Part shown: positions 27,937-40,588 of the stretch, in pieces
Layout: each line of letters begins with the position of its first letter
Numbering within the stretch: the stretch's first letter is position 1
IMG/VR virus record: IMGVR_UViG_3300035156_000206
Span: 227,968-291,967 of that record
Direction: 5' to 3' (one strand)
DNA length: 64,000 bases
Position numbers and translations under genes: made by a program
The notes under the pieces: model-generated
The model's database searches: none
The model's input: the letters and a program-made list of their open reading frames with translations, nothing else
Told to the model about the DNA's origin: nothing

Positions 27937-28397
27937 GGCCGCACCGATTCAACACCACGGTTAGCCAACAAGTCGGCACGCTCATTACCAATGTCACCGG
28001 CATGGCCCTTGACCCATTGCCAGGTCACGTTGTGGATCTCGCGAGCTTTATCCAGGCGGCGCCACAGCTCAGCATTCTTCACTGGCTCTTTTGCAGCCGT
28101 TTTCCAACCGTTCCTTTTCCAACCGTGAATCCATTCACTAATTCCTTTTTGGACGTACTTACTGTCCGTATACACGATGATTGAAGCGCTGTCTTGCAGA
28201 TACTCCAATGCTTGGATTACTGCCATTAGCTCCATGCGATTGTTGGTGCTGTTCAACTCGCCACCAAACATCTCGTGGATCCACTCGTAGTTGGTGATCA
28301 TTGCGCCCCATCCGCCAATGCCACCAGGGTTGCCTTTGCAGGCCCCATCTGCATAAATGTGGATTGGTTCAGCTGTGATTGGTTTTGATTTGGTCAT
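27933..28397 (-). CDS. rnhA: ribonuclease HI
   Basis: [43 protein letters not shown]. Confidence 0.95.
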
Positions 28398-28839
28398 TTG
28401 ATGCTTTCTTGGATTCGCCGCCATGCAAGGCCATAAATTCGGGAGTGGGAAGTTCGCATCCCTTTTCGCCGTTGCATACTGTGCACATCGGGATGCTGTT
28501 TTTGATTGTGTCAGCACCGTTTTGCTTAATAGGAATGATATGGTCCATCGTCATCATACGGATCTCGCCAGTAGGCATGATACCATACAGATTCATGTGG
28601 TATGGTCCTGTGTATGGCTTGTTCTTCTTTTTATTGAACCACGACTGGCGCTCAACCGAGAAGAACGAACCTTTGCAACCACATACCACACAATCTGTTC
28701 CCTTGTGCTTAAATGTCTGAAGACGCAGTGAACAGGAATTGATCTTGTTGCCCTCGTGGATGAAGCTGGCTCCCTCCGCAATCAAAGGCAGCACATCAAC
28801 AATCTGCAGAACACCAATACTTTCCATCTTCTGGGACAT
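28369..28839 (-). CDS. HNH endonuclease
   Basis: CVVC...[28 protein letters not shown]. Confidence 0.88.
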
Positions 28840-28870
28840 CTGCTACTCCAAGTTGTGAGATAATGCAATC

Positions 28871-28899
28871 ACTATACTTCACAACTCGGATTTTGTCAA
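28871..28899 (-). promoter_or_regulatory. sigma70 promoter TTGACA-N17-TATAGT
   Basis: Direct reading. Confidence 0.85.
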
Positions 28900-28902
28900 C
28901 TG

Positions 28903-29649
28903 TTAGCGAACGAACTTGTCATTGTAAGGGTTGATGGTACCTTTTTTAGCCCACACCTTTTTTCGCTCAGTCAAACTATCACCAACTTGGCACATCGTCA
29001 GCTTTGATACAGGATGTGGTTCAGTAGGAGAAACAACACCAGCTAGGATTTGCTCCCACACATGATCGAGCTCCTTCGTAGAGAAGGAAGCGTTCTCGTC
29101 GATGATGTACTTCATGTACACCAGCTTGCCTAGTTCAGCTTCCAACCTTGGCTGATTCAATTCGGCTGCTTTAAACGATATGCTGCGTTGGCGATCGCCA
29201 AACACTTTCAGCACGAGCTGGAGAGTATACTGCCCTTTGACTCGTTGGCGCCAACACGCACTGATTCCAGCAACACCAAATTCAACATTCTTGATGCACG
29301 ACTCTTTGTAATCTCGGTCAGGCAAATCGGCTGCGCTGGTGTGGTAGTGTGCACGTAGGAACTGGGATGCTCGGGCCAATGATTCTTCAGGGAGATCTAG
29401 GTATCGATCGTCACGGAAATATACTGCCGGGAAGTGGCGCTTTGGGATTTTCACCACCCAGTTATGATCGCCATTGCGAACGATATATTGTGGCACCGAT
29501 AAAATCTTGCCACGTACACAAACGTCACGGTGAGGTAGCGCTACAGAAACGAGTGGATTGTTCCGGTAATCGACATCTACATATGTGACATCAGCATTGC
29601 GGGTAACAGGAGTACGTACGTGAGGGAATTGTTTGGTCTTGGTTAACAT
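28903..29649 (-). CDS. hypothetical protein
   Basis: 248 aa ORF behind a promoter. Confidence 0.7.
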   Translation of the reverse strand: MLTKTKQFPHVRTPVTRNADVTYVDVDYRNNPLVSVALPHRDVCVRGKILSVPQYIVRNGDHNWVVKIPKRHFPAVYFRDDRYLDLPEESLARASQFLRAHYHTSAADLPDRDYKESCIKNVEFGVAGISACWRQRVKGQYTLQLVLKVFGDRQRSISFKAAELNQPRLEAELGKLVYMKYIIDENASFSTKELDHVWEQILAGVVSPTEPHPVSKLTMCQVGDSLTERKKVWAKKGTINPYNDKFVR

Positions 29650-29812
29650 GTGAGGTGAGTTCCGATAGATGTTTGGTGTAGAACATCATAGTTCGAACAG
29701 AACAGAAGATCAACAACTATTTGAACAGACAAAAAGAAACCCGCAGGGGGTAATCTGCGGGTTTCTTTTTCACAACACCAATCACTCTACTCAAGGAACA
29801 TGCACAAGATAT

Positions 29813-30127
29813 TTATACAGGTTCTGTTGACGGGCCTGGAAGGATAACTGGAGTACCCTTCATGTGGTTATAGTCTGTACGTCGAATTTCGACTGCCTCA
29901 ACTTCCGTGATTGATGCCTCTTCTATTTGTATACCACCAAAATGATCCTTAGTGTATGCTAATTCAAATAGCCTACCATCACGTTTCAGCAGCACGCTGT
30001 ACTGCGTGTAGGTCATGTAAGAGCTCCAGCCGATTAGCTCACCCTCCTCAATCAGAGCCTTGAGGTCTTCTAGGGTTTCAAATTTAAACATTGGTTGTGG
30101 TCCTTGTATGGATATTAAAAAACCCAC
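29813..30127 (-). CDS. hypothetical protein
   Basis: Start probably the later MFKFE. Confidence 0.65.
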   Translation of the reverse strand: MGFLISIQGPQPMFKFETLEDLKALIEEGELIGWSSYMTYTQYSVLLKRDGRLFELAYTKDHFGGIQIEEASITEVEAVEIRRTDYNHMKGTPVILPGPSTEPV

Positions 30128-30318
30128 CGGCCTGTAAAACCGGTGGGTTCCTTCCGTCTAGGGTCATAAGCCCTTAACGGTCGCTTCAATTGTCAAGGTG
30201 GTAAGTCTCAACTAGAGAAGCATACTATACTGCTGGTCAACAGTATTATCAATTGCAATCCTGCAATTGACAATTACCATTCTACACATTTATTGACAAA
30301 AGTCAACGGTTACTAATA

Positions 30319-30414
30319 TGGCGGAAAAAGTGGGGCTCGAACCCACACACCCCATCCCTGGAGCCTTCGGTTTTCAAGACCGCTGCCGCTAGTCCTCGCT
30401 CGGCTAATTTTTCC
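30319..30414 (-). tRNA. tRNA-Ser(TGA)
   Basis: Anticodon loop CTTGAAA, long variable arm, GCCA end. Confidence 0.9.
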
Positions 30415-30442
30415 TTTGTTCTGGCTTTTGTAATATGCTATG

Positions 30443-30527
30443 CTGTGTAGGTAGGGATCGAACCTACAGTTGGCAATTAAGCCGTCTCATTAACAGTGAG
30501 GTGCCTTACCGTTCGGCGCACTACACA
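30443..30527 (-). tRNA. tRNA-Asn(GTT) with long variable arm, no encoded CCA
   Basis: Loop CTGTTAA; variable arm GGC-TTAATT-GCC; acceptor stem extended to a 15 bp inverted repeat. Confidence 0.75.
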
Positions 30528-30556
30528 GCATAGCATACTACAGGTAATGCACTTTG

Positions 30557-30631
30557 TCTGGATGGTTGGATTCGAACCAACGTCCTCCCGCATCCAAGGC
30601 GGGCCGTCTACCAGGCTGACAATACACCCAG
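30557..30631 (-). tRNA. tRNA-Pro(TGG)
   Basis: Loop CTTGGAT, canonical arms. Confidence 0.88.
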
Positions 30632-30658
30632 ACAAAATGCACTACTAAATTTGTTTTG

Positions 30659-30731
30659 CTGACAAACCTGGGTTCGAACCAGGGACCCTCTGATTAACAG
30701 TCAGACGCTCTGCCAGCTGAGCTATATGTCA
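30659..30731 (-). tRNA. tRNA-Asn(GTT)
   Basis: Loop CTGTTAA, canonical D and T arms, no CCA. Confidence 0.85.
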
Positions 30732-30744
30732 GCAAAACAAACTA

Positions 30745-30822
30745 TGGTCTCTCGTGCTGGATTCGAACCAGCGTTATGCTCCGCCCCAAACGGAGTGCCA
30801 TACCAGACTAGGCGAACGAGAG
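30745..30822 (-). tRNA. tRNA-Pro(TGG)
   Basis: Loop TTTGGGG, ACCA end. Confidence 0.9.
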
Positions 30823-30850
30823 ATTGATACTTCTAAAACAAACAGACAAT

Positions 30851-30878
30851 AAAAAAGGGCCTCTTGTGGAGGCCCTTT
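30851..30878 (-). terminator. attenuator 1 terminator
   Basis: AAAGGGCCTC-CACAA-GAGGCCCTTT plus T tract, 28 nt before the first tRNA. Confidence 0.92.
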
Positions 30879-30908
30879 CAAAATTTTGTAACATCTTCTA
30901 TGGATGCT

Positions 30909-31022
30909 TTACATTTTGGTAAGACCTCTGAGGGCGATAGTTGAATTCGACGGACGCGAAGCAACAACCGGGTTATTCACCGGGTTGGAATTGCTATTTG
31001 AGTTGCGGACGAATGATTTCAT
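30909..31022 (-). CDS. 37-aa leader peptide MKSFVRNSNSNSNPVNNPVVASRPSNSTIALRGLTKM
   Basis: 7 Asn, 7 Ser, 3 Pro; its 3' end (GAGGTCTT, 30921-30928) can pair with the terminator 5' arm. Confidence 0.75.
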   Translation of the reverse strand: MKSFVRNSNSNSNPVNNPVVASRPSNSTIALRGLTKM

Positions 31023-31048
31023 GATTAACCTAAATGTGTTTGTATTTC

Positions 31049-31054
31049 TATTTA
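31049..31054 (-). promoter_or_regulatory. TAAATA late-type promoter for leader 1
   Basis: 27 nt upstream of the leader ATG. Confidence 0.6.
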
Positions 31055-31059
31055 TTATC

Positions 31060-31425
31060 AAGCCCCAAACGGGAACTGTGAGGGTACAAAAGGGTTTGGC
31101 CTGCCGGCCTTTCACCAGCTACGTTTTCGGCGCCAGATGGGTTGAGTACCATCAAGGACTTACATGCTTGCAACCCATTGACTGCTTACGAATGAGTGGA
31201 GGGCTATTACACCCTCCGTGCCTTTCGGCGAACTACAACGTCCTGACTGATACCAAGTCGTTTATACCCAGACGTTGCCACAAAAGGTATAACACTTAGG
31301 CTCTGCATCAGCACAATGTGACGATAGGGGCTCCGCTCTTCTGTTGCCGTATGGGACCACATTGCTAACCCACGAAAGGTTTAATGGAGCCGGCTCCAGG
31401 ACTAGTGGAGAGTCTTCCGGCATTG
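31060..31425 (-). ncRNA. putative structured ncRNA(s)
   Basis: Stems GCAACGTC/GACGTTGT, GCC-GAAA-GGC, GGAGGG/CCCTCC, GCTGG-TGAAA-GGCCGGC; no credible ORF. Confidence 0.5.
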
Positions 31426-31427
31426 AC

Positions 31428-31611
31428 TGGTGTTCCTTCAGGGAATCGAACCCACTTTTCTTGCATACCTCAGCGCACTTCATGATCCATCCAGGTCACT
31501 ATCTTCACCTACTTCCGCATTACTTGCCCGGTCCAGCCTAACACACTGATTTAACTTTCGCCCCAGGCCGGATGGTTGCCTGTGGTCAGTGATATAGCCC
31601 GAGGAAGGAAC
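31428..31611 (-). ncRNA. tRNA-ended RNA with about 140 nt interior
   Basis: GTTCCTTC/GAAGGAAC-A-CCA stem with GGG-TTCGATT-CCC T loop. Confidence 0.55.
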
Positions 31612-31616
31612 TTGTT

Positions 31617-31690
31617 TGGAGCGGGTAGAGAGAATCGAACTCTCGTCTTGAGCTTGGAAGGCTCTTGATCTGCCACTGACCTATACCCGC
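31617..31690 (-). tRNA. tRNA-Gly(TCC)
   Basis: Loop CTTCCAA, TCCA end. Confidence 0.93.
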
Positions 31691-31762
31691 ATTGTTCTTA
31701 CACCGCTTATTATGTACCGAGCGGATGTCACGGTAACCTCTTCCTACCAATGGTAGGTGAGC

Positions 31763-32098
31763 TTATTCAGCTGCTGGACTCGCTTTTGCGACATCAACCA
31801 CTTTGGCTTTTTTGCCTTTGTGTTTGTGCTCCTTAGGAGTTTCCACTACTTTTGTCTCTTCGACAACAGCAGTTTCAGCTGGTACTTCAACTTCTTTTTG
31901 TTCTTCGACCACTAGTACTTCAACTTCAACAACTGGGACAACTACTTCTTTTTGCTCTTCAACTACTGGAGCGACAACTGGAGCGACAACTGGAGCGACA
32001 ACTGGAGCGACAACTGGAGCGACAACTGGGGCAACTACTTCCGCTGGCGGAGCGTACGGGGCCGGCGTTGGCTGTAACGTAAAACCTTTGAGTTCCAT
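31763..32098 (-). CDS. low-complexity Val/Pro/Glu protein
   Basis: AGGA RBS; 12-bp tandem repeat (ACTGGAGCGACA) encoding VVAP. Confidence 0.65.
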   Translation of the reverse strand: MELKGFTLQPTPAPYAPPAEVVAPVVAPVVAPVVAPVVAPVVAPVVEEQKEVVVPVVEVEVLVVEEQKEVEVPAETAVVEETKVVETPKEHKHKGKKAKVVDVAKASPAAE

Positions 32099-32174
32099 AA
32101 TGGTTCCTATCATAGATGTGTGATCTATTTAGACAGAAACACTTTCAAAGGGACCTGGGTCCCTCTGAACTATC

Positions 32175-32426
32175 TTACGACTGCCATGACTTTGCTTCTT
32201 TTGCTGCCAATGCGGCTGCTGCAGCTGCGTCAGCGGCCAGGGCTGCTGTCAGAGGAGCACCGGTCAGGGTTGCTAAGAATGTCACACGAGCTGCTGCGAG
32301 AGCGGCTTGGTCGGTAACGTACTTTGCAGTAATTTCCTTCATGATGCCTTCTTTAACCCACAACTTGCGCTGTTTCAGCAACAGAGTGGTTGGGTCGTAT
32401 TGGGCTGGGGTGTTAACTAATGCCAT
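32175..32426 (-). CDS. Ala-rich small protein (probably late)
   Basis: AAGGA RBS; TAAATA at 32456-32461. Confidence 0.7.
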   Translation of the reverse strand: MALVNTPAQYDPTTLLLKQRKLWVKEGIMKEITAKYVTDQAALAAARVTFLATLTGAPLTAALAADAAAAAALAAKEAKSWQS

Positions 32427-32488
32427 AATGTTTTCCTTTTAAGAGGGTTGTCCTCTATTTATGGAATACATCACAGATACTACAAATA

Positions 32489-32563
32489 TGGCAGGCAAGC
32501 AAGGAATCGAACCTCAGACTGATGGTTTGGAGCCACCCGTTTTACCACTGAAACTACTCACCC
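32489..32563 (-). tRNA. tRNA-Trp(CCA)
   Basis: Loop CTCCAAA, GCCA end. Confidence 0.9.
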
Positions 32564-32573
32564 GTTGTACATC

Positions 32574-32648
32574 TTATTCCCAGTTGCGAACAATAATGCT
32601 CACTACCAAGGCTATTGCAAGCAGCCCTACAACATAAATCGCTGTCAT
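32574..32648 (-). CDS. 24-aa membrane micropeptide MTAIYVVGLLAIALVVSIIVRNWE
   Basis: Directly behind the promoter at 32682-32710. Confidence 0.45.
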   Translation of the reverse strand: MTAIYVVGLLAIALVVSIIVRNWE

Positions 32649-32681
32649 ATTTAATGTTCCGTTTGCAAATGCATGAGAAGA

Positions 32682-32710
32682 AGTATATATGATTGTTTTT
32701 CAACTGTCAA
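32682..32710 (-). promoter_or_regulatory. sigma70 promoter TTGACA-N17-TATACT
   Basis: Direct reading; lies upstream of tRNA-Trp and tRNA-Gly. Confidence 0.85.
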
Positions 32711-32726
32711 CAGTTATTTTTCTGGG

Positions 32727-33056
32727 TCACAATGTATGGTGGTCTACCAACACATCCCCAGGGAACAATACCTGGGTATCGCATTCCTTTTTCAATCGGA
32801 TCTGCATTTCAGTCATTTCTGGACGGCGACTCATCTTGCACATCCGCGTCATGAAGATGGCATACCCAGCACACTGCTGAGCTTTGTGGGGAGCAATGTC
32901 CGGGCCACCTGGTTGGGTGACCGTCATGTGGCAGGCGAAAGGAATGTCCGCTCGTACCAAGTCGACGAAGTCTTGTGGATCGTGTTCACCAACCCATCCC
33001 TTCATTTTGCCCACATAGGGACATTCAGCACAAGGCTCTTTAAGATCGTGTTTCAT
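32727..33056 (-). CDS. Cys/His-rich zinc-binding hypothetical protein
   Basis: PCAECPY...FACHMT...QQCAG. Confidence 0.75.
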   Translation of the reverse strand: MKHDLKEPCAECPYVGKMKGWVGEHDPQDFVDLVRADIPFACHMTVTQPGGPDIAPHKAQQCAGYAIFMTRMCKMSRRPEMTEMQIRLKKECDTQVLFPGDVLVDHHTL

Positions 33057-33769
33057 GCAAGTTCAGCCCAAAATGCAGCGGCCTGCACAACTTGCTTTAC
33101 TTTATGCAAGTCAAACTCGTTGTCCGTACGAATACCAGTTTCCATGTCTGCCCAATATGGCACAGCATGGGCTTCCATCGTCACAATTGCTTGTTCGATG
33201 TTGCTTGGGCCAAGTCCACCAGCAAACCCACAAAACATGTGTTCCAATCCCTCGGGCAGTTCCCAATTGTCAGGAGATTGCCCGCGGCCGCGCGAGTCGT
33301 CCATCAGGATGTGGACCCGGCCTCGGTCAACATTTTGCAATGAATTGATGAAAGAGGTGATGACGGATGCCGTCCCTGCATGGTATTGCAGAATAACAGC
33401 TGGGCTGATGTCCATTGCACGCTTGTACACATCAAGCACCTGGGACGTTGTGAAACTGGGCTTGCGAGCATTGATGTTGAGCTGCATGCGGTCCGCATAT
33501 TCCAGCTCAGCAGGCAATTGATTAGCCAGAAGCTGTTCGAACGCCAGGTCACCGCAAAGGTGGATAGCATTGTGCCCCGGCAATTGCATATCGAAGAACT
33601 CTTGTCGCCAACGTTGTGAAGGATTGCGCTGTTTGCCCTCCGTATACGGCGAATACAGCAATGCCCACTCAATGAAGGAGAATTCGGTGCTCAGATTGGC
33701 CAAATCAAGCAAAAGGGTATTGTCGTCTGCTCCGGTGAGCGACAGGCGGTCGAGGTATACAGGTTTCAT
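33053..33769 (-). CDS. TrpF/PRAI-like TIM-barrel protein
   Basis: SLTGADD, ILMDDSRGRG, GFAGGLGPSNI, WADMETGIRT motifs. Confidence 0.7.
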   Translation of the reverse strand: MKPVYLDRLSLTGADDNTLLLDLANLSTEFSFIEWALLYSPYTEGKQRNPSQRWRQEFFDMQLPGHNAIHLCGDLAFEQLLANQLPAELEYADRMQLNINARKPSFTTSQVLDVYKRAMDISPAVILQYHAGTASVITSFINSLQNVDRGRVHILMDDSRGRGQSPDNWELPEGLEHMFCGFAGGLGPSNIEQAIVTMEAHAVPYWADMETGIRTDNEFDLHKVKQVVQAAAFWAELA

Positions 33770-34005
33770 AGGATGCGATCTAGCACTTTCAGGTTGGGGC
33801 GTTTGTCAAAATACACCTGGCACGTGATGCAATACTTGCACCCTACTTGTGCCTCGCGACGAGCTTGAGGGATTGGGTCATGGCATTCGCGGCAGAACTT
33901 ATTGCTTGGACCAGTTGGTAACATCAACCGAGCAATGTCGATGGCATTTTCTACCATTGCCATCGCGTTGACTGATTCGTCGTCTGCTCCGCCGTAACCG
34001 CTCAT
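33766..34005 (-). CDS. DksA/TraR-type C4 zinc-finger protein
   Basis: CRECHDPIPQARREAQVGCKYCITCQ. Confidence 0.9.
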   Translation of the reverse strand: MSGYGGADDESVNAMAMVENAIDIARLMLPTGPSNKFCRECHDPIPQARREAQVGCKYCITCQVYFDKRPNLKVLDRIL

Positions 34006-34008
34006 TGT

Positions 34009-34368
34009 TTACCCTTTTTCCATTACCGTAATGCCATTATCACCCTTTTGCACAAAAATGTCAACGGGGTCCGACTTTGAAGCAGCAGCAATGGCTAGGA
34101 TCTTGTTGTATGTGGTCCTGCGGATGACAAGGGTTGTCAATTGTTCTTCACGTACACCATTCACAATACGGTGGACGCCTATGTGCACGTCCTTTGAGAG
34201 AGGCCAGCCCAGCTCGCACATCTGACAATCAAGAGGTTCTTGCATGCGCAAGGCTTGCTCAAGTGGCATGAACAAATCAGGGACACGTTCCTCGAATTTG
34301 ATGAGCGATGTGGATGGTTCAGGATCTCTCCAGAAGTGCAGATCTGGGGCTGTCATACTTTGACCCAT
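34009..34368 (-). CDS. hypothetical protein
   Basis: ORF track. Confidence 0.6.
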   Translation of the reverse strand: MGQSMTAPDLHFWRDPEPSTSLIKFEERVPDLFMPLEQALRMQEPLDCQMCELGWPLSKDVHIGVHRIVNGVREEQLTTLVIRRTTYNKILAIAAASKSDPVDIFVQKGDNGITVMEKG

Positions 34369-34832
34369 TCGGAAAATGGTATCATTGCAAGGGTGCTGTT
34401 GCTATACCGGAAGTCATTGGATACTTCTGCACCAACCCAATGAGGCTTGACAAAGCGCTGGGACTCATCATCCAGTTCCACTTCGACAGTGATCAACCCC
34501 TTGTTGACGCCCAAGAACTCATCAACTTCCCAGATCAGACCATCAAATTTGATCAGGCTCCGAATCTTGTCGATTGTGTGAGTTCCGTCCGCACGCAGGT
34601 CAAATAACTGCAGGGCATCTTCTTGGTGGAGTTCCACCTCTACCTCTGTACGTGACAAACCAACAGGCTTACCCTTGATGCCAAGGATGTGACTGTCACC
34701 ATCGATGCGCACTCGAACGGTGCGGGCTGGGTCTGTGGAAATATACCACTGTTGCATCCGCCGCTTGGACATCACAACATCACGCCAACCATCATCTGTG
34801 ACTAGGAACTTACGCTCAATCTCGATACCCAT
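34353..34832 (-). CDS. CYTH-domain triphosphatase / adenylate cyclase-like protein
   Basis: EIERKFLV, VRVRI, KIRSL, WEVDEF, YSNSTL. Confidence 0.92.
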   Translation of the reverse strand: MGIEIERKFLVTDDGWRDVVMSKRRMQQWYISTDPARTVRVRIDGDSHILGIKGKPVGLSRTEVEVELHQEDALQLFDLRADGTHTIDKIRSLIKFDGLIWEVDEFLGVNKGLITVEVELDDESQRFVKPHWVGAEVSNDFRYSNSTLAMIPFSEWVKV

Positions 34833-34959
34833 AATATTCCTCGTAAACGATTAGCAAATGCATTTGGAAATGCAGCAAACTTCATTATACGCGGTGTAAA
34901 CAAGATTATCAACAAGGATCGTAAAAAGAAAAACCCGCACAAGGCGGGTTCTCTAATTC

Positions 34960-35036
34960 TGGCGGAGTTGACGGGACTCGAACCCGCGACCTCTACCGTG
35001 ACAGGGTAGCGCTCTAACCAGCTGAGCTACAACTCC
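34960..35036 (-). tRNA. tRNA-Asp(GTC)
   Basis: Loop CTGTCAC; own TAAATA at 35045-35050 and a terminator near 34930. Confidence 0.95.
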
Positions 35037-35074
35037 AGAATGTTTATTTATGCTTCACTTTTTCAGATGTATTT

Positions 35075-35152
35075 TGGCGGTAGCTCTGGTTATTCAACAG
35101 CCAGGAAAGATAGCTGAACACTACTAACTAGTCTTCGTGCCCAAAGCCACCA
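35075..35152 (-). ncRNA. CCA-ended stem RNA
   Basis: 11-bp GGTGGCTTTGG/CCAGAGCTACC stem plus GCCA; no T loop. Confidence 0.5.
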
Positions 35153-35181
35153 CAGAATACGACTGCTAATGCACATTTGTT

Positions 35182-35255
35182 TGGGTTGAGAGACGGGAAT
35201 CGAACCCGCGCTACTTCCGTCACAAGGAAGGGCTCTACCATTGAGCTACTCCCAA
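35182..35255 (-). tRNA. tRNA-His(GTG)
   Basis: Loop TTGTGAC, C discriminator plus CCA. Confidence 0.9.
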
Positions 35256-35266
35256 ACAAATGTGCA

Positions 35267-35464
35267 CTACAAGTACACCATCCTACCTTCAATCATTTTG
35301 CCCCGTACCCTTCCGGTACCTTCACAGGAAGAACATTTGGGGCTTCTTCCTGAGTCGTATCTACCAGAACCATTGCATGCAACACAGGGAAATAACTTGA
35401 ACCCGTGCACATGCATATGGTAATGTGCAAACCGACGTGCTTTACGTATCGCGAAATCGCTCAT
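35267..35464 (-). CDS. DnaJ-type zinc-finger small protein
   Basis: CVACNGSG...CSSCEGTG. Confidence 0.75.
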   Translation of the reverse strand: MSDFAIRKARRFAHYHMHVHGFKLFPCVACNGSGRYDSGRSPKCSSCEGTGRVRGKMIEGRMVYL

Positions 35465-35732
35465 GTCTCATTGACTCTATGTAATCTTCAATCTCATTGT
35501 ACTGCATGCTGCGTGGTCGCACGATTACAAGGTATTCTCCTTTGTAGTCTGGGCTGCGATCTTTTAGGATCTTGAATGCGCCCGTAACATCAATGACAAT
35601 GCACCGATGTGCTTCACAGATGTCACGCATGGTTAGCTTTACATCACCAATTGTGATCTCGGATAGGGGCAATTTCATCCCATCCTTGTGTAGATCTAAA
35701 TGGGTATACAAACGAAGTTCAATTGGCCGCAT
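35442..35732 (-). CDS. hypothetical protein
   Basis: ORF track. Confidence 0.6.
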   Translation of the reverse strand: MRPIELRLYTHLDLHKDGMKLPLSEITIGDVKLTMRDICEAHRCIVIDVTGAFKILKDRSPDYKGEYLVIVRPRSMQYNEIEDYIESMRHERFRDT

Positions 35733-35754
35733 GATATACCTGGTTACATTGTTG

Positions 35755-35841
35755 TGGAGTAGGGGACAGGATTTGAACCTGCGGTGCGCTTTCGCATCGA
35801 GATTTGCAGTCTCGCTCCTTCGACCACTCAGACACCCCTAC
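35755..35841 (-). tRNA. tRNA-Cys(GCA) with long variable arm
   Basis: Loop CTGCAAA; variable arm ATGC-GAAA-GCGC; TCCA end. Confidence 0.85.
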
Positions 35842-35847
35842 ATTGTT

Positions 35848-36204
35848 CTATTCTGCTACTAAGGCTGTCTTGGCCTCAGTTTCTGCTCGCTTGACCTTTG
35901 ACGCACCATCTATCAGAGCAAACATCTGATCCATATTCAGGTCGCACATCCCTTTCGGGCAATTCATTTTTGCATACCTGTCAACTGGTACTTGGATGTC
36001 CTTGTAGATGAACATTAGCTCATCGTGCTTGAGAATGCCATCTATTACCATCAACCGGAACTGATTTACCATCACATCCGAGCCAACACAAACATTGGAC
36101 ACACTTTCGTCACAGTAATTCTCGATCCACTTCAGCACGCGTTTTGCTACTTGGCCATCAGGGACTACAGTCCCGTATTGCTCATCATATTCAACATACA
36201 GCAT
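35848..36204 (-). CDS. hypothetical protein
   Basis: AAGGAG RBS; start at 36204. Confidence 0.75.
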   Translation of the reverse strand: MLYVEYDEQYGTVVPDGQVAKRVLKWIENYCDESVSNVCVGSDVMVNQFRLMVIDGILKHDELMFIYKDIQVPVDRYAKMNCPKGMCDLNMDQMFALIDGASKVKRAETEAKTALVAE

Positions 36205-36213
36205 ATTACTCCT

Positions 36214-36289
36214 TGGTAGAGATAGTTGGATTCGAACCAACGTAGCCTTCCTTATGAGGGAAGTTCATAAACCACTCTGACACATCTCC
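36214..36289 (-). tRNA. tRNA-Met/Ile2(CAT)
   Basis: Loop CTCATAA, ACCA end. Confidence 0.88.
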
Positions 36290-36295
36290 AGCGAT

Positions 36296-36414
36296 TGGTG
36301 GAAGAGGGACCTGTCGTAGGCTATCGACTCCCTTTGCACTACCCTTAGCCTTCACATCCATAACCGCCTGCGCAGGCTCTATGGGTAGCTCCAGTTAGAG
36401 TACCGTTAACTTCC
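36296..36414 (-). ncRNA. CCA-ended structured RNA
   Basis: GGAAG/CTTCC-A-CCA; inner stems GCTACCC/GGGTAGT, GCCTG/CAGGC, GTCG/CGAC. Confidence 0.5.
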
Positions 36415-36420
36415 ATTGTT

Positions 36421-36496
36421 TGGCACGGGATCTAGGATTCGAACCTAGGACCTACGCAGTCAAAGTGCGTTGCTCTACCAGCTGAGCTAATCCCGA
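36421..36496 (-). tRNA. tRNA-Gln(TTG)
   Basis: Loop CTTTGAC, GCCA end. Confidence 0.92.
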
Positions 36497-36520
36497 ACAG
36501 TCTTTACTTACTACATATTC

Positions 36521-36597
36521 TGGCGGGGATGGTAGGATTCGAACCTACGCATGGCGGAATCAAAATCCGCTGCCTTAACCAACTTGGCGACATCCCT
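36521..36597 (-). tRNA. tRNA-Gln(TTG)
   Basis: Loop TTTTGAT, GCCA end. Confidence 0.92.
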
Positions 36598-36614
36598 CTT
36601 GTTACAATACTACT

Positions 36615-36909
36615 AAAGAAGCACTCGAACGCGTGCTGCTACGCCTAATGCTCTAAGGGTCTTGATAAGCATCTGCTTGGGCTTTTATCCCCTATTACCC
36701 GCACATTAAGTCACCGGCTTGGCCCGCGTGACACAGCATCCCCGAAACATCGCGATTGAATCGAGTTGACGCTTTACCTATCAAACTGTACTTGTCCTTC
36801 CCCTGTGGTTATACGGTCTAAACGCACCCTGGGATCGGGCGGACACGGCTCCACTTGCAACTCATTAAAGATGGCTGCCCTTAAGCCAACTGCATACGAG
36901 CGCTTCTTT
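36615..36909 (-). ncRNA. 295-nt stem-closed ncRNA with a 23S H43-like element
   Basis: 13-bp closing stem AAAGAAGCGCTCG/CGAGTGCTTCTTT; contains GTTGGCTTA-AGG-GCAGCCATC-TTTAATGAG. Confidence 0.65.
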
Positions 36910-36925
36910 AGTACCACTAAACTAG

Positions 36926-37009
36926 ACCATGTACCGGGGATTCGAACCCACGTTAATCGCCGCTTGACCTGTTACCATGAACCTTACTGTGAGGCGATTA
37001 CATCCATGG
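36926..37009 (-). ncRNA. tRNA-like RNA lacking canonical D and anticodon arms
   Basis: CCATG/CATGG ends, T loop GGG-TTCGAAT-CCC, AATCGCC/GGCGATT stem. Confidence 0.5.
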
Positions 37010-37046
37010 AGTCCGTACATGACTTAAAAACTCGTATTACAAATTT

Positions 37047-37234
37047 TATAATGGTCGGGCTCTTCAAAATATGCATATTGCCTGGGAGGGAGTCAAACCC
37101 TACCGTCTCTCCCAGTAGTCGCCTAAAAGGCTTTCTGGAAGCATCCATTGTCGCTGGACCACATGCTACACATTTCGATCTGGCCAGATACTCAACAGTG
37201 TCTAGAATTTGTTGAGCAGAGCCCGATCATTATA
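37047..37234 (-). ncRNA. 188-nt stem-closed ncRNA
   Basis: 17-bp closing stem TATAATGATCGGGCTCT/AGAGCCCGACCATTATA. Confidence 0.55.
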
Positions 37235-37240
37235 AAACTT

Positions 37241-37315
37241 TGGTGCCGCTAATTGGTATCGAACCAATCTCCCTGGGGTTTCAGGCCAGTGCTAATCCAT
37301 CTCAGCTACAGCGGC
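37241..37315 (-). tRNA. tRNA-Phe(GAA)
   Basis: Loop CTGAAAC, ACCA end. Confidence 0.88.
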
Positions 37316-37333
37316 ATGGTAAAGCCACTAAAG

Positions 37334-37543
37334 TCACTTTTCATTTTGTTTCTTTCTCCACGCATATGTGCGTTCAAGTGCTGCATCTAATAAAACTTGG
37401 TCAATTTTGCCAGCCACAATGTAGTGCTCGTAACAAACATCACAACATGCAAAGCAATGTTTTATGTTCGAACCCACTACATGACAATTACATATACAGG
37501 CTGTGATTGATTCTCCCAGCCATGTAAATGTGCGCTTACTCAT
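37334..37543 (-). CDS. Cys-rich hypothetical protein
   Basis: ORF track. Confidence 0.55.
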   Translation of the reverse strand: MSKRTFTWLGESITACICNCHVVGSNIKHCFACCDVCYEHYIVAGKIDQVLLDAALERTYAWRKKQNEK

Positions 37544-37651
37544 TTCTTCATGACCCTTGACATTAAGTCATTGTAAACTGCCATGACAGGGTCATTTCGC
37601 ATCTTGCGTGCTTCTCGGGATGCTTTTGCATCCTCATACATCTTTAGGTAA

Positions 37652-37873
37652 TCAGGGACAGCTCTTGGATCCATTTGTTTCTCCTACAGGTATAACTTCA
37701 TCACTATCAACGGAAATGATAACCATTTCCGACTTTTCCCGTGCCTTGACCAATGGATTTACTTTCCAAGGGTAGCAACACGGAACACAATGTAGTATTG
37801 TGCCTTCTGGGTACCGATGACAAGCACAACTACATTTCTGCTCTTCATATACCATCGGAATGATCGCAGCCAT
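37652..37873 (-). CDS. Cys-rich hypothetical protein
   Basis: CSCACH...HCVPCC. Confidence 0.65.
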   Translation of the reverse strand: MAAIIPMVYEEQKCSCACHRYPEGTILHCVPCCYPWKVNPLVKAREKSEMVIISVDSDEVIPVGETNGSKSCP

Positions 37874-38172
37874 TACTCTTCGTCCATTGGCACTTCAACA
37901 GCATCATTTGCGTTGAACTTGCGCTCATTGTTGCGGCGCTTCGTCCAACCATAATCCGCCGCCACCTGGGCCACACCCATCTTCCCAACTTGGTTAGGAT
38001 TCTGGCTTACCATCGTCACAAAAGTGTGACCCAGGTCGTCTCGGTGCTTGCGAACACATTCAAGTGCTCCAACAAGATCATTATCACCGAAATCTGAGAA
38101 ATGAGCAACATTAATGTTGTCGTTTCCTGTCTTACCACCTAAAAAACTTTCAGTCCAATAGACTCGAAACAT
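37873..38172 (-). CDS. hypothetical protein
   Basis: Overlapping stop/start codons. Confidence 0.75.
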   Translation of the reverse strand: MFRVYWTESFLGGKTGNDNINVAHFSDFGDNDLVGALECVRKHRDDLGHTFVTMVSQNPNQVGKMGVAQVAADYGWTKRRNNERKFNANDAVEVPMDEE

Positions 38173-38537
38173 TACTTTCCTTGGCCTCGCGGCAAATTCA
38201 GTTCAAGAGCAGCGCGTTCCAACATGTCATCATTTGGTAAGGCATCAGTACCATACTTGGCGCTTACTTCCTTTGGCGACATTGTCACCGGGCCAAATAC
38301 AACCTTCATTACCTGAACCGAATCAACATACCGCTTCCCACCTTTACCTTCAGCCTTAGCGATGTGCGCTGCTGCCTGAATCAAACATGGGATGCTTGCA
38401 TGGATGTCATATTCAAAGGTGATCTCCGTATTAGCCTTTTCATCCCTAGGACCAGATACTGCATCGGTTGGGGTGTTTACGCCTTTTGGATCACCAGAAC
38501 CTGGCAAACGCATTTCTTTCAATTCAATCAACTTCAT
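38172..38537 (-). CDS. hypothetical protein
   Basis: AAGGAG RBS. Confidence 0.75.
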   Translation of the reverse strand: MKLIELKEMRLPGSGDPKGVNTPTDAVSGPRDEKANTEITFEYDIHASIPCLIQAAAHIAKAEGKGGKRYVDSVQVMKVVFGPVTMSPKEVSAKYGTDALPNDDMLERAALELNLPRGQGK

Positions 38538-38563
38538 GTTAGCTCCTTAGTTACAGTATTGTA

Positions 38564-38773
38564 TCACCTATTTACTGAAGAGTCAACATCAAGTTCCTTA
38601 TTTGGTACTGCATCTTTGATTTTCAGGTCATTAAACTTGTCAATGACCTCCATGGGTATCGATTCGTACTTGAACTCCGATTCCCCTGGCTTTTGTTCGT
38701 TTCGTTCTTCTTGGTCACAACCTGCACATGACCCACCGCTACCTGAGTAGCCATGATAGTAACAATCCGCCAT
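38564..38773 (-). CDS. hypothetical protein
   Basis: ORF track. Confidence 0.6.
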   Translation of the reverse strand: MADCYYHGYSGSGGSCAGCDQEERNEQKPGESEFKYESIPMEVIDKFNDLKIKDAVPNKELDVDSSVNR

Positions 38774-38784
38774 CTTTTATCCTT

Positions 38785-38867
38785 TGGTGCCCCCGCAGAG
38801 ACTCGAACTCTGAAAGGCGCGGCTTCTGAGGCCGCTAGCTGTACCAATTTGCATTAGCCACAGGGGC
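38785..38867 (-). tRNA. tRNA-Leu(CAG) with short variable loop and enlarged D loop
   Basis: Loop CTCAGAA, ACCA end. Confidence 0.85.
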
Positions 38868-38869
38868 GT

Positions 38870-39052
38870 TTATCGTAAAGTACCAATAAAATCTTGGTAA
38901 TCTTTAACCTGACGCACAATTTGTTCGTGGATGCGCTTCAAATCAGCTTCATCCGTATACGTCTCAATTGTACCATCAAGATACTCTACTACAGCCTTTC
39001 GGCCTGGCTCAACCGCGATGTCTTCATAATCCACCGATTTGATGAGCTTCAT
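38870..39052 (-). CDS. hypothetical protein
   Basis: ATGA-coupled. Confidence 0.65.
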   Translation of the reverse strand: MKLIKSVDYEDIAVEPGRKAVVEYLDGTIETYTDEADLKRIHEQIVRQVKDYQDFIGTLR

Positions 39053-39219
39053 TCGTCGTCATCCTCGTACTGACGATACTCATCTTGAGCACATTCATAA
39101 CCTTGCCAGTTATCAACACCAGCATTGCGCAGACAGTTTAGGAACAGACTGTCGTCATACAACTTTTCATACTCTGCCACAGACATCGTGACCACATCAT
39201 CTTTAATTTCAATAGCCAT
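39049..39219 (-). CDS. 56-aa acidic phage protein (not in ORF track)
   Basis: MAIEIKDDVV...AGVDNWQGYECAQ; GAAGG RBS. Confidence 0.7.
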   Translation of the reverse strand: MAIEIKDDVVTMSVAEYEKLYDDSLFLNCLRNAGVDNWQGYECAQDEYRQYEDDDE

Positions 39220-39234
39220 TTGCTACCTTCATTA

Positions 39235-39321
39235 TGGTGCGAGTAGAGGGACTCGAACCCCCACGATATTCCTACCGCCAGGACCTAAACCTGGTGCGTC
39301 TACCAATTTCGCCATACTCGC
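39235..39321 (-). tRNA. tRNA-Leu(TAG)
   Basis: Loop TTTAGGT, long variable arm, ACCA end. Confidence 0.93.
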
Positions 39322-39341
39322 ATGCTTCAAACAACAAAATC

Positions 39342-39450
39342 TGGGGGGAGTGAGGGGAGTCGAACCCCATGATGGAACGTCATGCCTGGACAACCCGACG
39401 CCTGGTGGTGTCCCCATCTTCCCGCATACTGAGCCCGCACTGCACTCCCC
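39342..39450 (-). ncRNA. tRNA-like RNA with 8-bp acceptor stem and no anticodon loop
   Basis: GGGGAGTG/CACTCCCC, T loop GGGG-TTCGACT-CCCC. Confidence 0.55.
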
Positions 39451-39459
39451 ATTGTTACA

Positions 39460-39606
39460 TTTGTAGCAACCGGTACTGATCTCCGGTTTGTCCCCAAGCC
39501 GTATGAGGCCGCTTACAAGGGGTTCGGGCATTACGTAGAACAAGGTGGCCACACCTACGCAACCTCTTTTATGTTCCCGCGCATCAGTCTGCGCATTTGC
39601 TACAAA
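39460..39606 (-). ncRNA. 147-nt stem-closed ncRNA
   Basis: TTTGTAGCAA/TTGCTACAAA closing stem with four internal hairpins. Confidence 0.55.
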
Positions 39607-39609
39607 ATC

Positions 39610-39780
39610 TTCGCTTTAGGCTTTCACCTACCCTGGCCTTGAGGCTGCGTATGAAGAGTACCGATCCATGCCGATACCTCCGAGCAATCGCTAAGTTGAT
39701 TCACTCTTCGGTTTCCCGAACGCTGATCAAGCGCTGCCTAGAAGGGCCGTATAATAATTTACAACCCCACGTACAATTGC
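39610..39780 (-). ncRNA. putative structured ncRNA
   Basis: TCGG-GAAA-CCGA, GAAGAGT/ACTCTTC, TAGG-TGAAAG-CCTA. Confidence 0.4.
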
Positions 39781-39785
39781 GAAAC

Positions 39786-39915
39786 TGGTGCCGGCGGCTG
39801 GAATCGAACCCGCAAGAACTGCTTTTCACACAGTCTCATCACCCTGAGCATCAACTGGGACTAGTACTCCAGTCTATCTCTTATCGATGCTACCCTTTTG
39901 CATGGGGCGTCCGGC
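39786..39915 (-). ncRNA. tRNA-ended RNA with enlarged interior
   Basis: GCCGG/CCGGC-A-CCA, TTCGATT T loop, AGCATCGA/TTGATGCT arm. Confidence 0.55.
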
Positions 39916-39921
39916 ATATCT

Positions 39922-39999
39922 TGGTGGATGCGAAGGGAATCGAACCCTCATGCCCCGCTACTACCGTTTGTCCAGGATGACCTAGGCGGGAGCGCACCC
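39922..39999 (-). ncRNA. tRNA-like RNA without canonical D or anticodon arms
   Basis: GGGTGCG/CGCATCC-A-CCA, GAGGG-TTCGATT-CCCTT, CCCGC/GCGGG. Confidence 0.55.
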
Positions 40000-40006
40000 A
40001 ATGTTA

Positions 40007-40082
40007 TGGTGGAGGATGCCGGGATCGAACCGGCCACCTGATGCTTGCAAAGCACCCGCTCTCCCAAATGAGCTAATCCCCC
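40007..40082 (-). tRNA. tRNA-Ala(TGC)
   Basis: Loop TTTGCAA, G3-U70 pair, ACCA end. Confidence 0.95.
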
Positions 40083-40087
40083 AAATT

Positions 40088-40366: not shown

Positions 40367-40399
40367 GGTCTTCTCCAAGTTCTTAATGAGACATCCTAT

Positions 40400-40477
40400 C
40401 GAACAAAGAGGAATCGAACCTCTTGAGCCCAACCGCGGATGTGGAGAACGTACCCAACTGCTTCCGTTACTTTGCTC
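40400..40477 (-). pseudogene. degenerate tRNA
   Basis: AGAGG-TTCGATT-CCTCT T arm and GAGCAA/TTGTTC stem only. Confidence 0.4.
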
Positions 40478-40588
40478 TCTTCCTAGGTGCTTCCGGCGAT
40501 ATTGAAGTCTCGGCCGGTACCAGCCTTCCTTCTCGACGTGCCATCTTCAATCTAGTCGCCCAGTGTTTCACGTTAAGGGTGTCTCATT

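What the first reader, a model, noticed from the sequence alone, without database searches (positions are those of the whole stretch)
30319..31054. tRNA-sensing attenuator 1: an Asn/Ser/Pro leader peptide gates a Pro-Asn-Pro-Asn-Ser tRNA operon
Seen on the minus strand, in order: TAAATA (31049-54), a 37-codon ORF (31022-30909), a strong intrinsic terminator (30878-30851), then tRNA-Pro, Asn, Pro, Asn, Ser. 17 of 37 codons are Asn (7), Ser (7) or Pro (3), including 16 of 21 in residues 7-27. These are exactly the three tRNA species downstream. GAGGTCTT (codons 32-34) can pair with AGGGCCTC in the terminator 5' arm, nested around CAAAAT/ATTTTG and GCATC/GATGT, forming a mutually exclusive antiterminator. 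The N/S/P run ends where a stalled ribosome would stop covering that arm. Established: this is trp/his-type attenuation geometry. Inference: the phage makes these tRNAs only when cognate tRNAs are depleted, for example by anticodon-nuclease defences or starvation. I know of no described leader-peptide attenuator controlling phage tRNA genes.
Basis: partly seen in the sequence, partly recalled or inferred. Interest (0 to 1): 0.95.

Follow-up and report, generated by a model that had tools for sequence, protein, structure and literature searches.

The report
Leader-peptide switch gating phage tRNA genes
A short reading frame rich in Asn, Ser and Pro codons sits with a terminator/antiterminator switch just before a phage's tRNA-Pro, -Asn and -Ser genes, and four unrelated phage groups (including cultured Caulobacter phages) show the same layout, so phages probably make certain tRNAs only when ribosomes run short of them.

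Summary
On the minus strand lie a 37-codon ORF (31022-30909; Asn 7, Ser 7, Pro 3), a strong intrinsic terminator (30879-30853) and then tRNA Pro-Asn-Pro-Asn-Ser. The proposed antiterminator is the minimum-energy fold of the transcript before the terminator's 3' arm is made.

The window's phage (a 292-kb IMG/VR contig) has no relatives, so this element cannot be tested by covariation. Its N/S/P run is unique in all six frames of the window. {N,P,S} is the single best of all 1140 residue triples for this peptide.

While building controls I found the same layout four more times, in unrelated phages, each with a leader whose codons match the tRNAs downstream. One case is conserved in 38 cultured Caulobacter phage records (phiCbK, CcrBL9 and others). 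There it shows compensatory changes in all three helices, third-position changes in Tyr, Arg and Phe codons that leave the residue unchanged, and an in-frame codon deletion. I found no description of it in the papers searched.

Weak points in the window: a poor Shine-Dalgarno site, only a weak promoter, two non-cognate Ser codons and a possible tRNA-remnant stretch.

Verdict: probably (about 0.65) a leader-peptide transcription attenuator, a new variant of a known kind that regulates tRNA genes.

The parts
31054..31082 (-). Weak sigma70-like promoter match CTCACA-17-GATAAT. It is doubtful; transcription may instead arrive from the strong promoter at 32710-32682.
   Evidence: 9 of 12 matches, and sites of this quality are no commoner than in shuffles.
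31028..31031 (-). Weak Shine-Dalgarno AGGU, 5 nt before the ATG.
   Evidence: anti-SD duplex -3.1 kcal/mol. This is weaker than 78% of confident genes of the window and no better than 40% of random ATGs.
30909..31022 (-). Leader ORF of 37 codons plus TAA.
30942..31004 (-). Regulatory run, codons 7-27. 16 of 21 are Asn, Ser or Pro. In the whole ORF, 15 of the 17 N/S/P codons can be read by the downstream tRNAs (AGC and UCC cannot).
30869..30928 (-). Antiterminator. GAGGUCUU (30928-30921) pairs with AGGGCCUC (30876-30869), nested round CAAAAU/AUUUUG and the GCAUCC hairpin. The stop codon lies inside it.
   Evidence: MFE -19.9 before the 3' arm exists; shuffle p 0.002; barrier to the terminator about 9.9 kcal/mol.
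30845..30879 (-). Intrinsic terminator: 11-bp stem, loop CACAA, U tract. It starts 29 nt after the stop codon and ends about 30 nt before tRNA-Pro.
30745..30822 (-). tRNA-Pro(UGG), with CCA encoded.
30658..30731 (-). tRNA-Asn(GUU), inside a 15-bp extended acceptor helix.
30556..30631 (-). tRNA-Pro(UGG), inside a 21-nt flanking helix.
30442..30527 (-). 86-nt long-variable-arm tRNA with anticodon GUU ('Asn'), inside a 22-nt flanking helix.
30319..30414 (-). tRNA-Ser(UGA), the last gene of the unit. The next promoters start at 30306.

Best explanation
The element is a leader-peptide transcription attenuator that controls a five-gene tRNA operon. RNA polymerase transcribes the 37-codon leader. If a ribosome translates it smoothly to the UAA, it melts the base of the antiterminator, because the stop codon and codons 32-34 lie inside that helix. 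The terminator 29 nt further on is then free to fold, and transcription stops before the tRNA genes. If the ribosome stalls in the Asn/Ser/Pro run (codons 7-26) because the cognate charged tRNAs are scarce, or if no ribosome loads, GAGGUCUU pairs with the terminator's 5' arm first. Polymerase then reads through and tRNA-Pro, -Asn and -Ser are made. This relieves the stall, giving negative feedback. Shown: the anatomy, the competing folds, the statistical match of codons to tRNAs, and the existence of the same layout, with covariation, in other phages. Inferred: that the leader is translated, that stalling decides read-through, and what depletes the tRNAs in vivo.
For: The anatomy and folds are verified. 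The N/S/P run is unique in the six-frame window. The leader was the top outlier of 422 ORFs upstream of 113 phage tRNA clusters, p 6e-10 against 2e-5 for the next. {N,P,S} is the best of all 1140 triples. No promoter lies between terminator and tRNAs, so the five tRNAs need read-through. Antiterminator gain: 0.2% of shuffles, top 5% of natural terminators. The barrier of about 10 kcal/mol makes it kinetically competitive. The stop-to-terminator distance of 29 nt lets a terminating ribosome leave the terminator free; PMC4824070 found that termination efficiency reaches its maximum beyond about 30 bp. Independent analogues: the QQSFYWCPP leader before Trp-Tyr-Pro-Ser-Gln-Cys in 7 loci, with a promoter, an SD and 30 nt from stop to terminator; TFNSHNTFNQLP before His-Pro-Thr-Asn-Phe-Gln-Ser in L075; a P/D/F/Y/H-rich leader before Pro-Asp-Pro-Asp-Phe-Tyr-His in L040; and YRQFVRQIQVVRNIR before a Val/Ile/Gln/Arg cluster (with Phe in most and Asn in some genomes) in Caulobacter phages. 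Each true tRNA set is at or near the top of all same-size sets. In the Caulobacter family there are compensatory changes in the 1:2, 2:3 and 3:4 helices, including a three-way covarying column; the aligned leaders also show third-position changes that keep the residue and an in-frame codon deletion.
Against: There is no homologue of the window's own element anywhere searched. The SD is weak and the promoter match is at background level. Two of seven Ser codons (AGC, UCC) are not read by tRNA-Ser(UGA). At equilibrium the terminator wins. A 14/15-nt match to a tRNA T-loop/acceptor (p about 0.025) suggests that part of the ORF is a decayed tRNA, which in one frame reads Ser-Asn-Pro/Ser. A terminator hairpin without a U tract at 32169-32144 and a canonical terminator at 30147-30123 also lack downstream promoters, so read-through may be a general habit of this phage. 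In L060 and L058 the leader is kept although the downstream tRNA set is reduced. No other cluster of the window has a matching leader.
Confidence: 0.65

Rival explanations
1. A plain or constitutively leaky internal terminator. The hairpin ends, or dampens, the transcript that starts at the strong promoter 32710-32682. The upstream hairpin merely sets a fixed read-through level, or a phage antitermination factor overrides it at a set time. The ORF is not translated, or is irrelevant.
For: The SD is weak and there is no convincing promoter of its own. Two further hairpin sites without downstream promoters lie nearby, at 32169-32144 (no U tract) and 30147-30123 (canonical). Anti-pairing of this strength occurs in about 5% of natural terminators. 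Without translation the antiterminator forms by default.
Against: It does not explain why the one extreme N/S/P run of the 64-kb window lies exactly before the only Pro/Asn/Ser tRNA cluster. It also does not explain why four other phage groups repeat the codon-to-tRNA match.
Confidence: 0.2
2. Coincidence in a graveyard of decayed tRNA genes. The stretch between tRNA-Gly and tRNA-Pro (31616-30880) is degenerate tRNA DNA, and the T-arm motif GGTTCGAATCC reads Gly-Ser-Asn-Pro in one frame, so an N/S/P-rich spurious ORF is expected there.
For: There is a 14/15-nt match of codons 25-29 to the T-loop/acceptor of tRNA-Met (p 0.025). tRNA-Gln and tRNA-Met align in register over the ORF. A T-arm-like GGGTTCGATTCCC lies in the 560-nt ORF-free stretch upstream.
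Against: The whole-tRNA alignment is not significant (p 0.08). Rfam's tRNA model finds nothing there even at E 10. No real tRNA of the window reaches 14/21 N/S/P in any frame. The main run NSNSNSNPVNNP is not T-arm-like. A remnant origin would not exclude present function.
Confidence: 0.1
3. A small regulatory RNA or small-protein gene whose 3' end is the terminator, unrelated to the tRNAs.
For: Weak sub-threshold Rfam matches to Hfq-binding sRNAs, driven by the terminator alone.
Against: All matches are far below the gathering scores. The five tRNAs downstream would then be left without any promoter.
Confidence: 0.05

Closest known systems
ilvGMEDA (ilvL) and thr leader-peptide attenuators of Enterobacteria (multivalent attenuation)
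   Same: A short leader ORF in which several different amino acids are over-represented (from my own knowledge: ilvL has 15 of 32 residues Ile/Leu/Val). An intrinsic terminator with a mutually exclusive antiterminator. Ribosome position decides the outcome.
   Different: Those regulate amino-acid biosynthesis enzymes. Here the regulated genes are the tRNAs themselves and the setting is a phage. No 1:2 hairpin sequesters the antiterminator strand in the window's element, so its untranslated default is read-through.
pheST (pheM leader) attenuator of E. coli
   Same: A leader-peptide attenuator that controls a component of the translation apparatus for the same amino acid as the leader codons (from my own knowledge).
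   Different: It regulates an aminoacyl-tRNA synthetase, a single amino acid and a cellular gene.
T-box riboswitches
   Same: They sense the supply of a specific tRNA and act through a terminator/antiterminator choice.
   Different: A T-box binds uncharged tRNA directly through a specifier codon and the T-box sequence, and needs no translation. No T-box match was found here, and here the codons sit in an ORF.
Analogous phage elements found here: Caulobacter phage leader MSKTYRQFVRQIQVVRNIR..., the QQSFYWCPP family, L075 and L040
   Same: The same order of parts: leader with codons cognate to the downstream tRNAs, a segment in or just after the 3' part of the ORF that pairs with the terminator 5' arm (in the Caulobacter family it lies mid-ORF), 23-30 nt from stop to terminator in the three metagenomic groups, then the tRNA cluster.
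   Different: No sequence similarity to the window's element. They have better ribosome-binding sites and, mostly, clear promoters. The QQSFYWCPP and Caulobacter families have a 1:2 helix as well.

Membership tests
Leader-peptide (trp/his/ilv-type) transcription attenuator | Short ORF with a usable start signal in the leader transcript | tested here: inconclusive
   An ATG ORF of 37 codons is present. The SD is only AGGU, -3.1 kcal/mol, which is background level. The public gene call set holds no protein for it.
Leader-peptide (trp/his/ilv-type) transcription attenuator | A run of codons for the amino acid(s) whose supply is sensed, matching the regulated genes | tested here: met
   16/21 N/S/P, unique in the window. 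It is the best of 1140 triples and the top outlier of 422 ORFs upstream of phage tRNA clusters.
Leader-peptide (trp/his/ilv-type) transcription attenuator | An intrinsic terminator between the leader and the regulated genes, with no promoter in between | tested here: met
   About 30 nt lie between the terminator and tRNA-Pro, with no promoter-like site.
Leader-peptide (trp/his/ilv-type) transcription attenuator | An antiterminator mutually exclusive with the terminator | tested here: met
   It is the MFE of the truncated transcript. Shuffle p 0.002. Rank 5 of 92 natural terminators. Barrier 9.9 kcal/mol.
Leader-peptide (trp/his/ilv-type) transcription attenuator | Geometry: a stalled ribosome frees the antiterminator strand, and a terminating ribosome blocks it but not the terminator | tested here: met
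   Masking simulation: stalls at codon 26 or earlier leave the helix intact, while a ribosome at the stop removes it. The 29 nt from stop to terminator compare with the roughly 30-bp threshold in PMC4824070.
Leader-peptide (trp/his/ilv-type) transcription attenuator | A 1:2 (pause/anti-antiterminator) helix giving termination when the leader is not translated | tested here: not met
   With the whole upstream RNA present, the antiterminator is still the MFE before the 3' arm is made. A 5'UTR:ACCAAAAUGU pairing appears only in the full-length fold.
Leader-peptide (trp/his/ilv-type) transcription attenuator | Conservation and covariation in homologues | tested here: inconclusive
   No homologue of the window's element exists in any collection searched. 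Covariation was shown only for the analogous Caulobacter phage family.
Leader-peptide (trp/his/ilv-type) transcription attenuator | Read-through responds to the supply of cognate charged tRNA | not testable with these tools
   This needs reporter assays, Term-seq or Ribo-seq.
T-box riboswitch | Stem I with a specifier loop, and the conserved T-box sequence in the antiterminator bulge | tested here: not met
   No T-box hit in Rfam, even at E 10, over 30830-31620 or 28000-46000.

The most novel reading that the evidence does not exclude
Phages of several unrelated lineages carry a previously undescribed class of leader-peptide attenuators. In each, the leader spells out, codon by codon, the tRNA species encoded just downstream. 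The phage thereby measures which tRNAs the infected cell lacks and switches on exactly those genes. The window's N/S/P element is one member. The class is present in cultured Caulobacter phages such as phiCbK and CcrBL9, where it can be tested directly.
Probability: 0.6. Interest if true: 0.9.

Novelty: new variant of a known kind. Interest (0 to 1): 0.88.

Why it matters
Leader-peptide attenuation is a textbook mechanism, but as far as I know and could find it is described only for amino-acid biosynthesis and a few synthetase genes of bacteria. Attenuators that regulate tRNA genes, in phages, would have three consequences. (1) They would be the first cis-regulatory logic known for the large tRNA arrays of big phages, whose purpose is still debated (codon usage, host tRNA decay, or escape from anticodon nucleases). 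(2) They would show that the phage monitors the translational state of the host codon by codon and responds homeostatically. (3) They would give a simple way to read from sequence which tRNAs are limiting for a given phage. Because the same layout is conserved in phiCbK-like phages of Caulobacter crescentus, a laboratory model, the idea is directly testable.

Tried and rejected
Homologue searches for the window's element all failed.
- megablast and blastn against 50,697 phage records hit only the tRNAs.
- Exact-pattern and protein scans of IMG/VR returned only the source contig.
- The 248-aa neighbour has one relative, on a 1-kb contig. The 92-aa neighbour has none.
- A wobble-degenerate leader pattern in the metagenome collection gave seven chance hits.
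- Loci found through RNase H or CYTH are not syntenic.

Other searches that gave nothing.
- Rfam gives only tRNAs and sub-threshold noise, with no T-box and no known leader.
- The 560-nt stretch upstream has no unusual folding energy (z = 0.18) and no blastn match.
- T5-like Vibrio phage Thalassa has small ORFs abutting its tRNAs, but without any codon match.
- Leaders of the QQSFYWCPP, L040 and L075 groups have no match in cultured phages.

Leads examined and set aside.
- The E/S-rich ORF in L057 overlaps tRNA-Thr, so I dismissed it.
- The His-rich start of the 65-aa zinc-finger ORF before tRNA-His is at chance level among 422 ORFs.
- The tRNA-Tyr-like element after the Caulobacter phage terminator is not recognised by Rfam or ARAGORN, so I do not count Tyr as cognate.
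- I did not type the E. coli trp leader as a yardstick. The energies I recall for it are from memory and are not used as evidence.

Full report
**What is there.** The window is part of IMGVR_UViG_3300035156_000206, a 292-kb phage contig. It carries at least 23 tRNA genes, all on the minus strand, between 43756 and 30319.

At the downstream end of this tRNA region, reading the minus strand, the parts lie in this order:
- A weak promoter-like match at 31082-31054 (9 of 12 positions).
- A weak Shine-Dalgarno AGGU at 31031-31028.
- A 37-codon ORF at 31022-30909, MKSFVRNSNSNSNPVNNPVVASRPSNSTIALRGLTKM.
- An imperfect hairpin.
- A strong intrinsic terminator at 30879-30853: 11 bp, dG -17.8, a run of six U in UUUUUUAUU.
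- About 30 nt later, tRNA-Pro(UGG), Asn(GUU), Pro(UGG), an 86-nt long-arm tRNA with anticodon GUU, and Ser(UGA).
- The next promoters, which begin at 30306.

The exception is the -10 element, which is not convincing.

**Is it more than chance?** Three tests bear on the codon match.
- A run of 16 N/S/P in 21 residues occurs once among 62,382 stop-free windows of the six-frame translation of the 64 kb; the next best place has 14.
- I screened 422 ORFs upstream of 113 tRNA clusters in about 60 phage loci fetched as controls. This leader was the extreme outlier for enrichment in residues cognate to the downstream tRNAs (p 6e-10, next 2e-5).
- Of all 1140 possible residue triples, {N,P,S} is the single best for this peptide.

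A cruder null gives a weaker figure. Low-complexity ORFs of this degree make up about 2% of small ORFs, and NPS is not among the thirty commonest of their residue sets. By my rough estimate that still leaves a chance of the order of 0.5% for the window.

Fifteen of the 17 N/S/P codons are readable by the encoded anticodons. AGC and UCC are not.

**RNA switch.** In the full-length RNA the terminator plus a small upstream hairpin is the MFE. GAGGUCUU (codons 32-34) pairs with AGGGCCUC of the terminator 5' arm, around two inner helices, at -19.9 kcal/mol.

The energy gained by this pairing is reached by 0.2% of dinucleotide shuffles of the upstream 80 nt. Among 92 natural terminator-like sites in about 940 kb of phage DNA it ranks only fifth. 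Taken alone, this feature is therefore worth about p = 0.05.

The direct refolding path to the terminator has a barrier of about 10 kcal/mol. By my estimate that is slow enough to compete with polymerase escape.

Masking the RNA as a ribosome would gives two outcomes. Stalls at codon 26 or earlier leave the antiterminator intact. A ribosome at the stop codon destroys it.

The terminator starts 29 nt after the stop codon. At about that distance a terminating ribosome no longer represses a terminator (PMC4824070).

Unlike trp, no helix sequesters the antiterminator strand when the leader is untranslated, so the default is read-through.

**Weak points of the window's element.**
- The SD is no better than that of 40% of random ATGs, and weaker than that of 78% of confident genes.
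- The promoter match is at background level.
- Nearby, a terminator hairpin without a U tract (32169-32144) and a canonical terminator (30147-30123) also lack downstream promoters. Read-through may therefore be general in this phage.
- Codons 25-29 match the T-loop/acceptor of tRNA-Met at 14 of 15 nt (p about 0.025). Whole tRNAs align in register over the ORF, though not significantly (p 0.08). Part of the ORF may thus be a decayed tRNA, whose T-arm reads Ser-Asn-Pro in one frame.
- Against that last point, Rfam's tRNA model finds nothing there, and no real tRNA of the window reaches 14/21.

**No relatives.** Every search for homologues of the leader, of the terminator or of the neighbouring genes returned only the source contig or chance hits. 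Covariation cannot be tested for this element.

**The same layout elsewhere.** This is the result that changes the assessment. The control loci contained independent, non-homologous elements with the same order of parts.

(A) Seven IMG/VR loci (L036, L052, L054, L062, L058, L060, L088).
- They have a sigma70-type promoter (TTGACA-17-TATATT in L054) and an SD AGGAA.
- The 20-codon ORF is MHKTAQQSFYWCPPTGRGLS.
- Thirty nt after the stop comes a strong terminator, then tRNA Trp-Tyr-Pro-Ser-Gln-Cys.
- All six species are spelled in the run QQSFYWCPP, with matching codons.
- Before the 3' arm exists, codons 17-20 pair with the terminator 5' arm around an inner hairpin. In the full-length RNA, codons 2-5 pair with the same segment, which is a 1:2 helix.
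- The inner hairpin differs in sequence between loci but stays a hairpin. C-to-U changes in region 1 keep G-U pairs.

(B) L075.
- The leader is MRKLANVTFNSHNTFNQLPLK...
- The tRNAs downstream are His-Pro-Thr-Asn-Phe-Gln-Ser(GCU).
- Eleven of 12 residues in the run are cognate, and all seven species are present.
- The Ser codon is AGU, as the GCU anticodon requires.
- This terminator had the strongest anti-pairing of all 92.

(C) L040.
- The leader is MFTHSSPHFDFAFSDSDYPMSPVDYGVSTD.
- It ends 29 nt before a terminator.
- Pro-Asp-Pro-Asp-Phe-Tyr-His follow.

(D) Caulobacter phages.
- The element is present in 38 records, including phiCbK, CcrBL9, Magneto, Karma and Rogue.
- It consists of a conserved promoter, an unannotated 31-32-codon ORF MSK.YRQFV(R)QIQ.VR..R..., a strong terminator (annotated as such in two records) and a Val/Ile/Gln/Arg tRNA cluster that also holds Phe in most genomes and Asn in some.
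- In six of the eight distinct genomes compared, 13-14 of the 15 core residues are cognate. The figure is 10 in CcrBL10, 12 in Rogue and 9 in phiCbK, which has no tRNA-Arg.

For each of groups A-C and the window's own leader I compared the true tRNA set with all or 3000 same-size sets. The number scoring as well was 1 of 1140 for the window, 1 of 3000 for (A), 0 of 3000 for (B) and 19 of 3000 for (C). The cross-matching matrix has its highest value on the diagonal for each of the four leaders.

Of 20 clusters with a terminator within 110 nt upstream, 8 gave a leader with p below 0.005, counting the near-identical group (A) loci separately; these belong to four independent leaders: the window, groups A and B, and L040.

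**Covariation in the Caulobacter family.** I aligned eight genomes and counted pairs by script.
- 1:2 hairpin inside the ORF: 48 of 48 cells paired, one compensatory pair.
- 2:3 antiterminator: 88 of 96 cells paired, two compensatory pairs. Sliding the partner by 1-3 columns drops this to 26-48 of 96.
- 3:4 terminator: 95 of 96 cells paired, three compensatory pairs.
- Column 138 of the terminator 5' arm covaries with both of its alternative partners: A-U in CcrBL9 and CcrSC, G-C in the others.

The leader evolves like a coding sequence. It shows the third-position changes TAT/TAC, CGT/CGC and TTT/TTC, which keep the residue, and an in-frame loss of one Arg codon.

The phiCbK genome paper mentions no attenuator or leader, and reports that Rfam found no RNA element other than tRNAs (PMC3556154). 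Four further full-text searches found no description of leader-peptide control of tRNA genes.

**Caveats on the analogues.**
- The screen was post hoc.
- In L058 and L060 the leader is unchanged although the downstream set is reduced to Trp-Tyr-Pro or Trp-Met-Pro.
- phiCbK lacks tRNA-Arg although its leader keeps four Arg codons in the core.
- None of the other tRNA clusters of the window, nor those of Thalassa, shows a matched leader. The mechanism is therefore used for some clusters only.

**Conclusion.** The mechanism best supported for 31054-30319 is leader-peptide attenuation of a tRNA operon. Efficient translation of the N/S/P-rich leader allows termination. Stalling for lack of charged tRNA-Asn, -Ser or -Pro lets the antiterminator form, and the tRNA genes are transcribed.

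The existence of the class rests on good comparative evidence. Membership of the window's element rests on anatomy and statistics only, and is weakened by its poor start signals, so I put it at about 0.65.

What depletes the tRNAs is not addressed by any result here. Host anticodon nucleases, phage-induced decay of host tRNA, or demand from late proteins are all possible.

It is a new variant of a known kind: a known mechanism with a new class of regulated genes and a new biological setting.

Noticed in passing
window 30429-30741: Three of the five tRNAs of the cluster sit inside long helices that continue the acceptor stem, with no unpaired discriminator. The arms are 15 nt at 100% for Asn1, 21 nt at 86% for Pro2 and 22 nt at 95% for the long-arm Asn. 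No tRNA of the window outside this five-gene cluster has more than 3 bp of such extension. These could be processing stalks (RNase III-like), mobile cassettes, or tRNA-like decoys that cannot be charged.
   Followed up: partly
window 30442-30527; L073 7314-7398 and 7406-7493; L023 13166-13257: An 86-nt tRNA with a long variable arm (type II shape) but the Asn anticodon GUU and a G discriminator. Similar long-arm GUU tRNAs occur in two unrelated phage contigs. Which synthetase charges them (AsnRS, or SerRS through the long arm) is open.
   Followed up: partly
window 30123-30306: Three overlapping sigma70-like promoters are followed after about 80-100 nt by a strong terminator (30147-30123), just before the 92-aa ORF 30091-29813. 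This could be a small RNA gene or a second regulated internal terminator. No antiterminator-like pairing was found.
   Followed up: partly
window 31055-31616: A 560-nt stretch between tRNA-Gly and the leader has no convincing ORF, GC of 0.50-0.54 and a T-arm-like GGGTTCGATTCCC. It has no Rfam hit, no blastn hit and no unusual folding energy. It may be decayed tRNA genes or an unknown RNA.
   Followed up: partly
window 35267-35464: A 65-aa ORF with a DnaJ-like CxxCxGxG zinc motif starts with AHYHMHVH and ends 11 nt before tRNA-His. The His enrichment (p 2e-3) is what chance gives among 422 ORFs.
   Followed up: partly
window 39922-39999, 40880-40955, 41180-41250, 42782-42853: Odd members of the tRNA region: a tRNA with an undetermined two-base 'anticodon'; two tRNAs seen by Rfam but not by ARAGORN; and a short match to the tRNA-like part of tmRNA (E 2e-7, below the gathering score).
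   Followed up: no
L092 11621-11740 (Caulobacter phage CcrBL9 gp149): An annotated 39-aa hypothetical protein, MTRIHTTLPTAKPASTGALTLASWPASSKPLLRHSAVLA, has 20 of 21 residues cognate to the 13-tRNA cluster that starts 119 nt downstream (Pro, Thr, Lys, Leu, His, Ala, Ser, Trp). It may be a second leader in the same phage. The high GC content inflates Ala/Pro/Ser/Thr, so the evidence is weaker.
   Followed up: partly
L098 about 1680-1790 and the equivalent in L099-L101, L092 19300-19440: Between the terminator and the first annotated tRNA of the Caulobacter phages lies a tRNA-shaped element with an acceptor stem, CCA, a long variable arm and the anticodon loop CUGUAAA (Tyr). Neither ARAGORN nor Rfam calls it. 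The leader has a Tyr codon at position 5.
   Followed up: partly
window 113-3487 and 7579-10059: A 1124-aa collagen-repeat protein (Pfam Collagen, E 4e-71) and two adjacent TelA-like proteins. The Pro-rich collagen-like protein may be one source of demand for tRNA-Pro.
   Followed up: no
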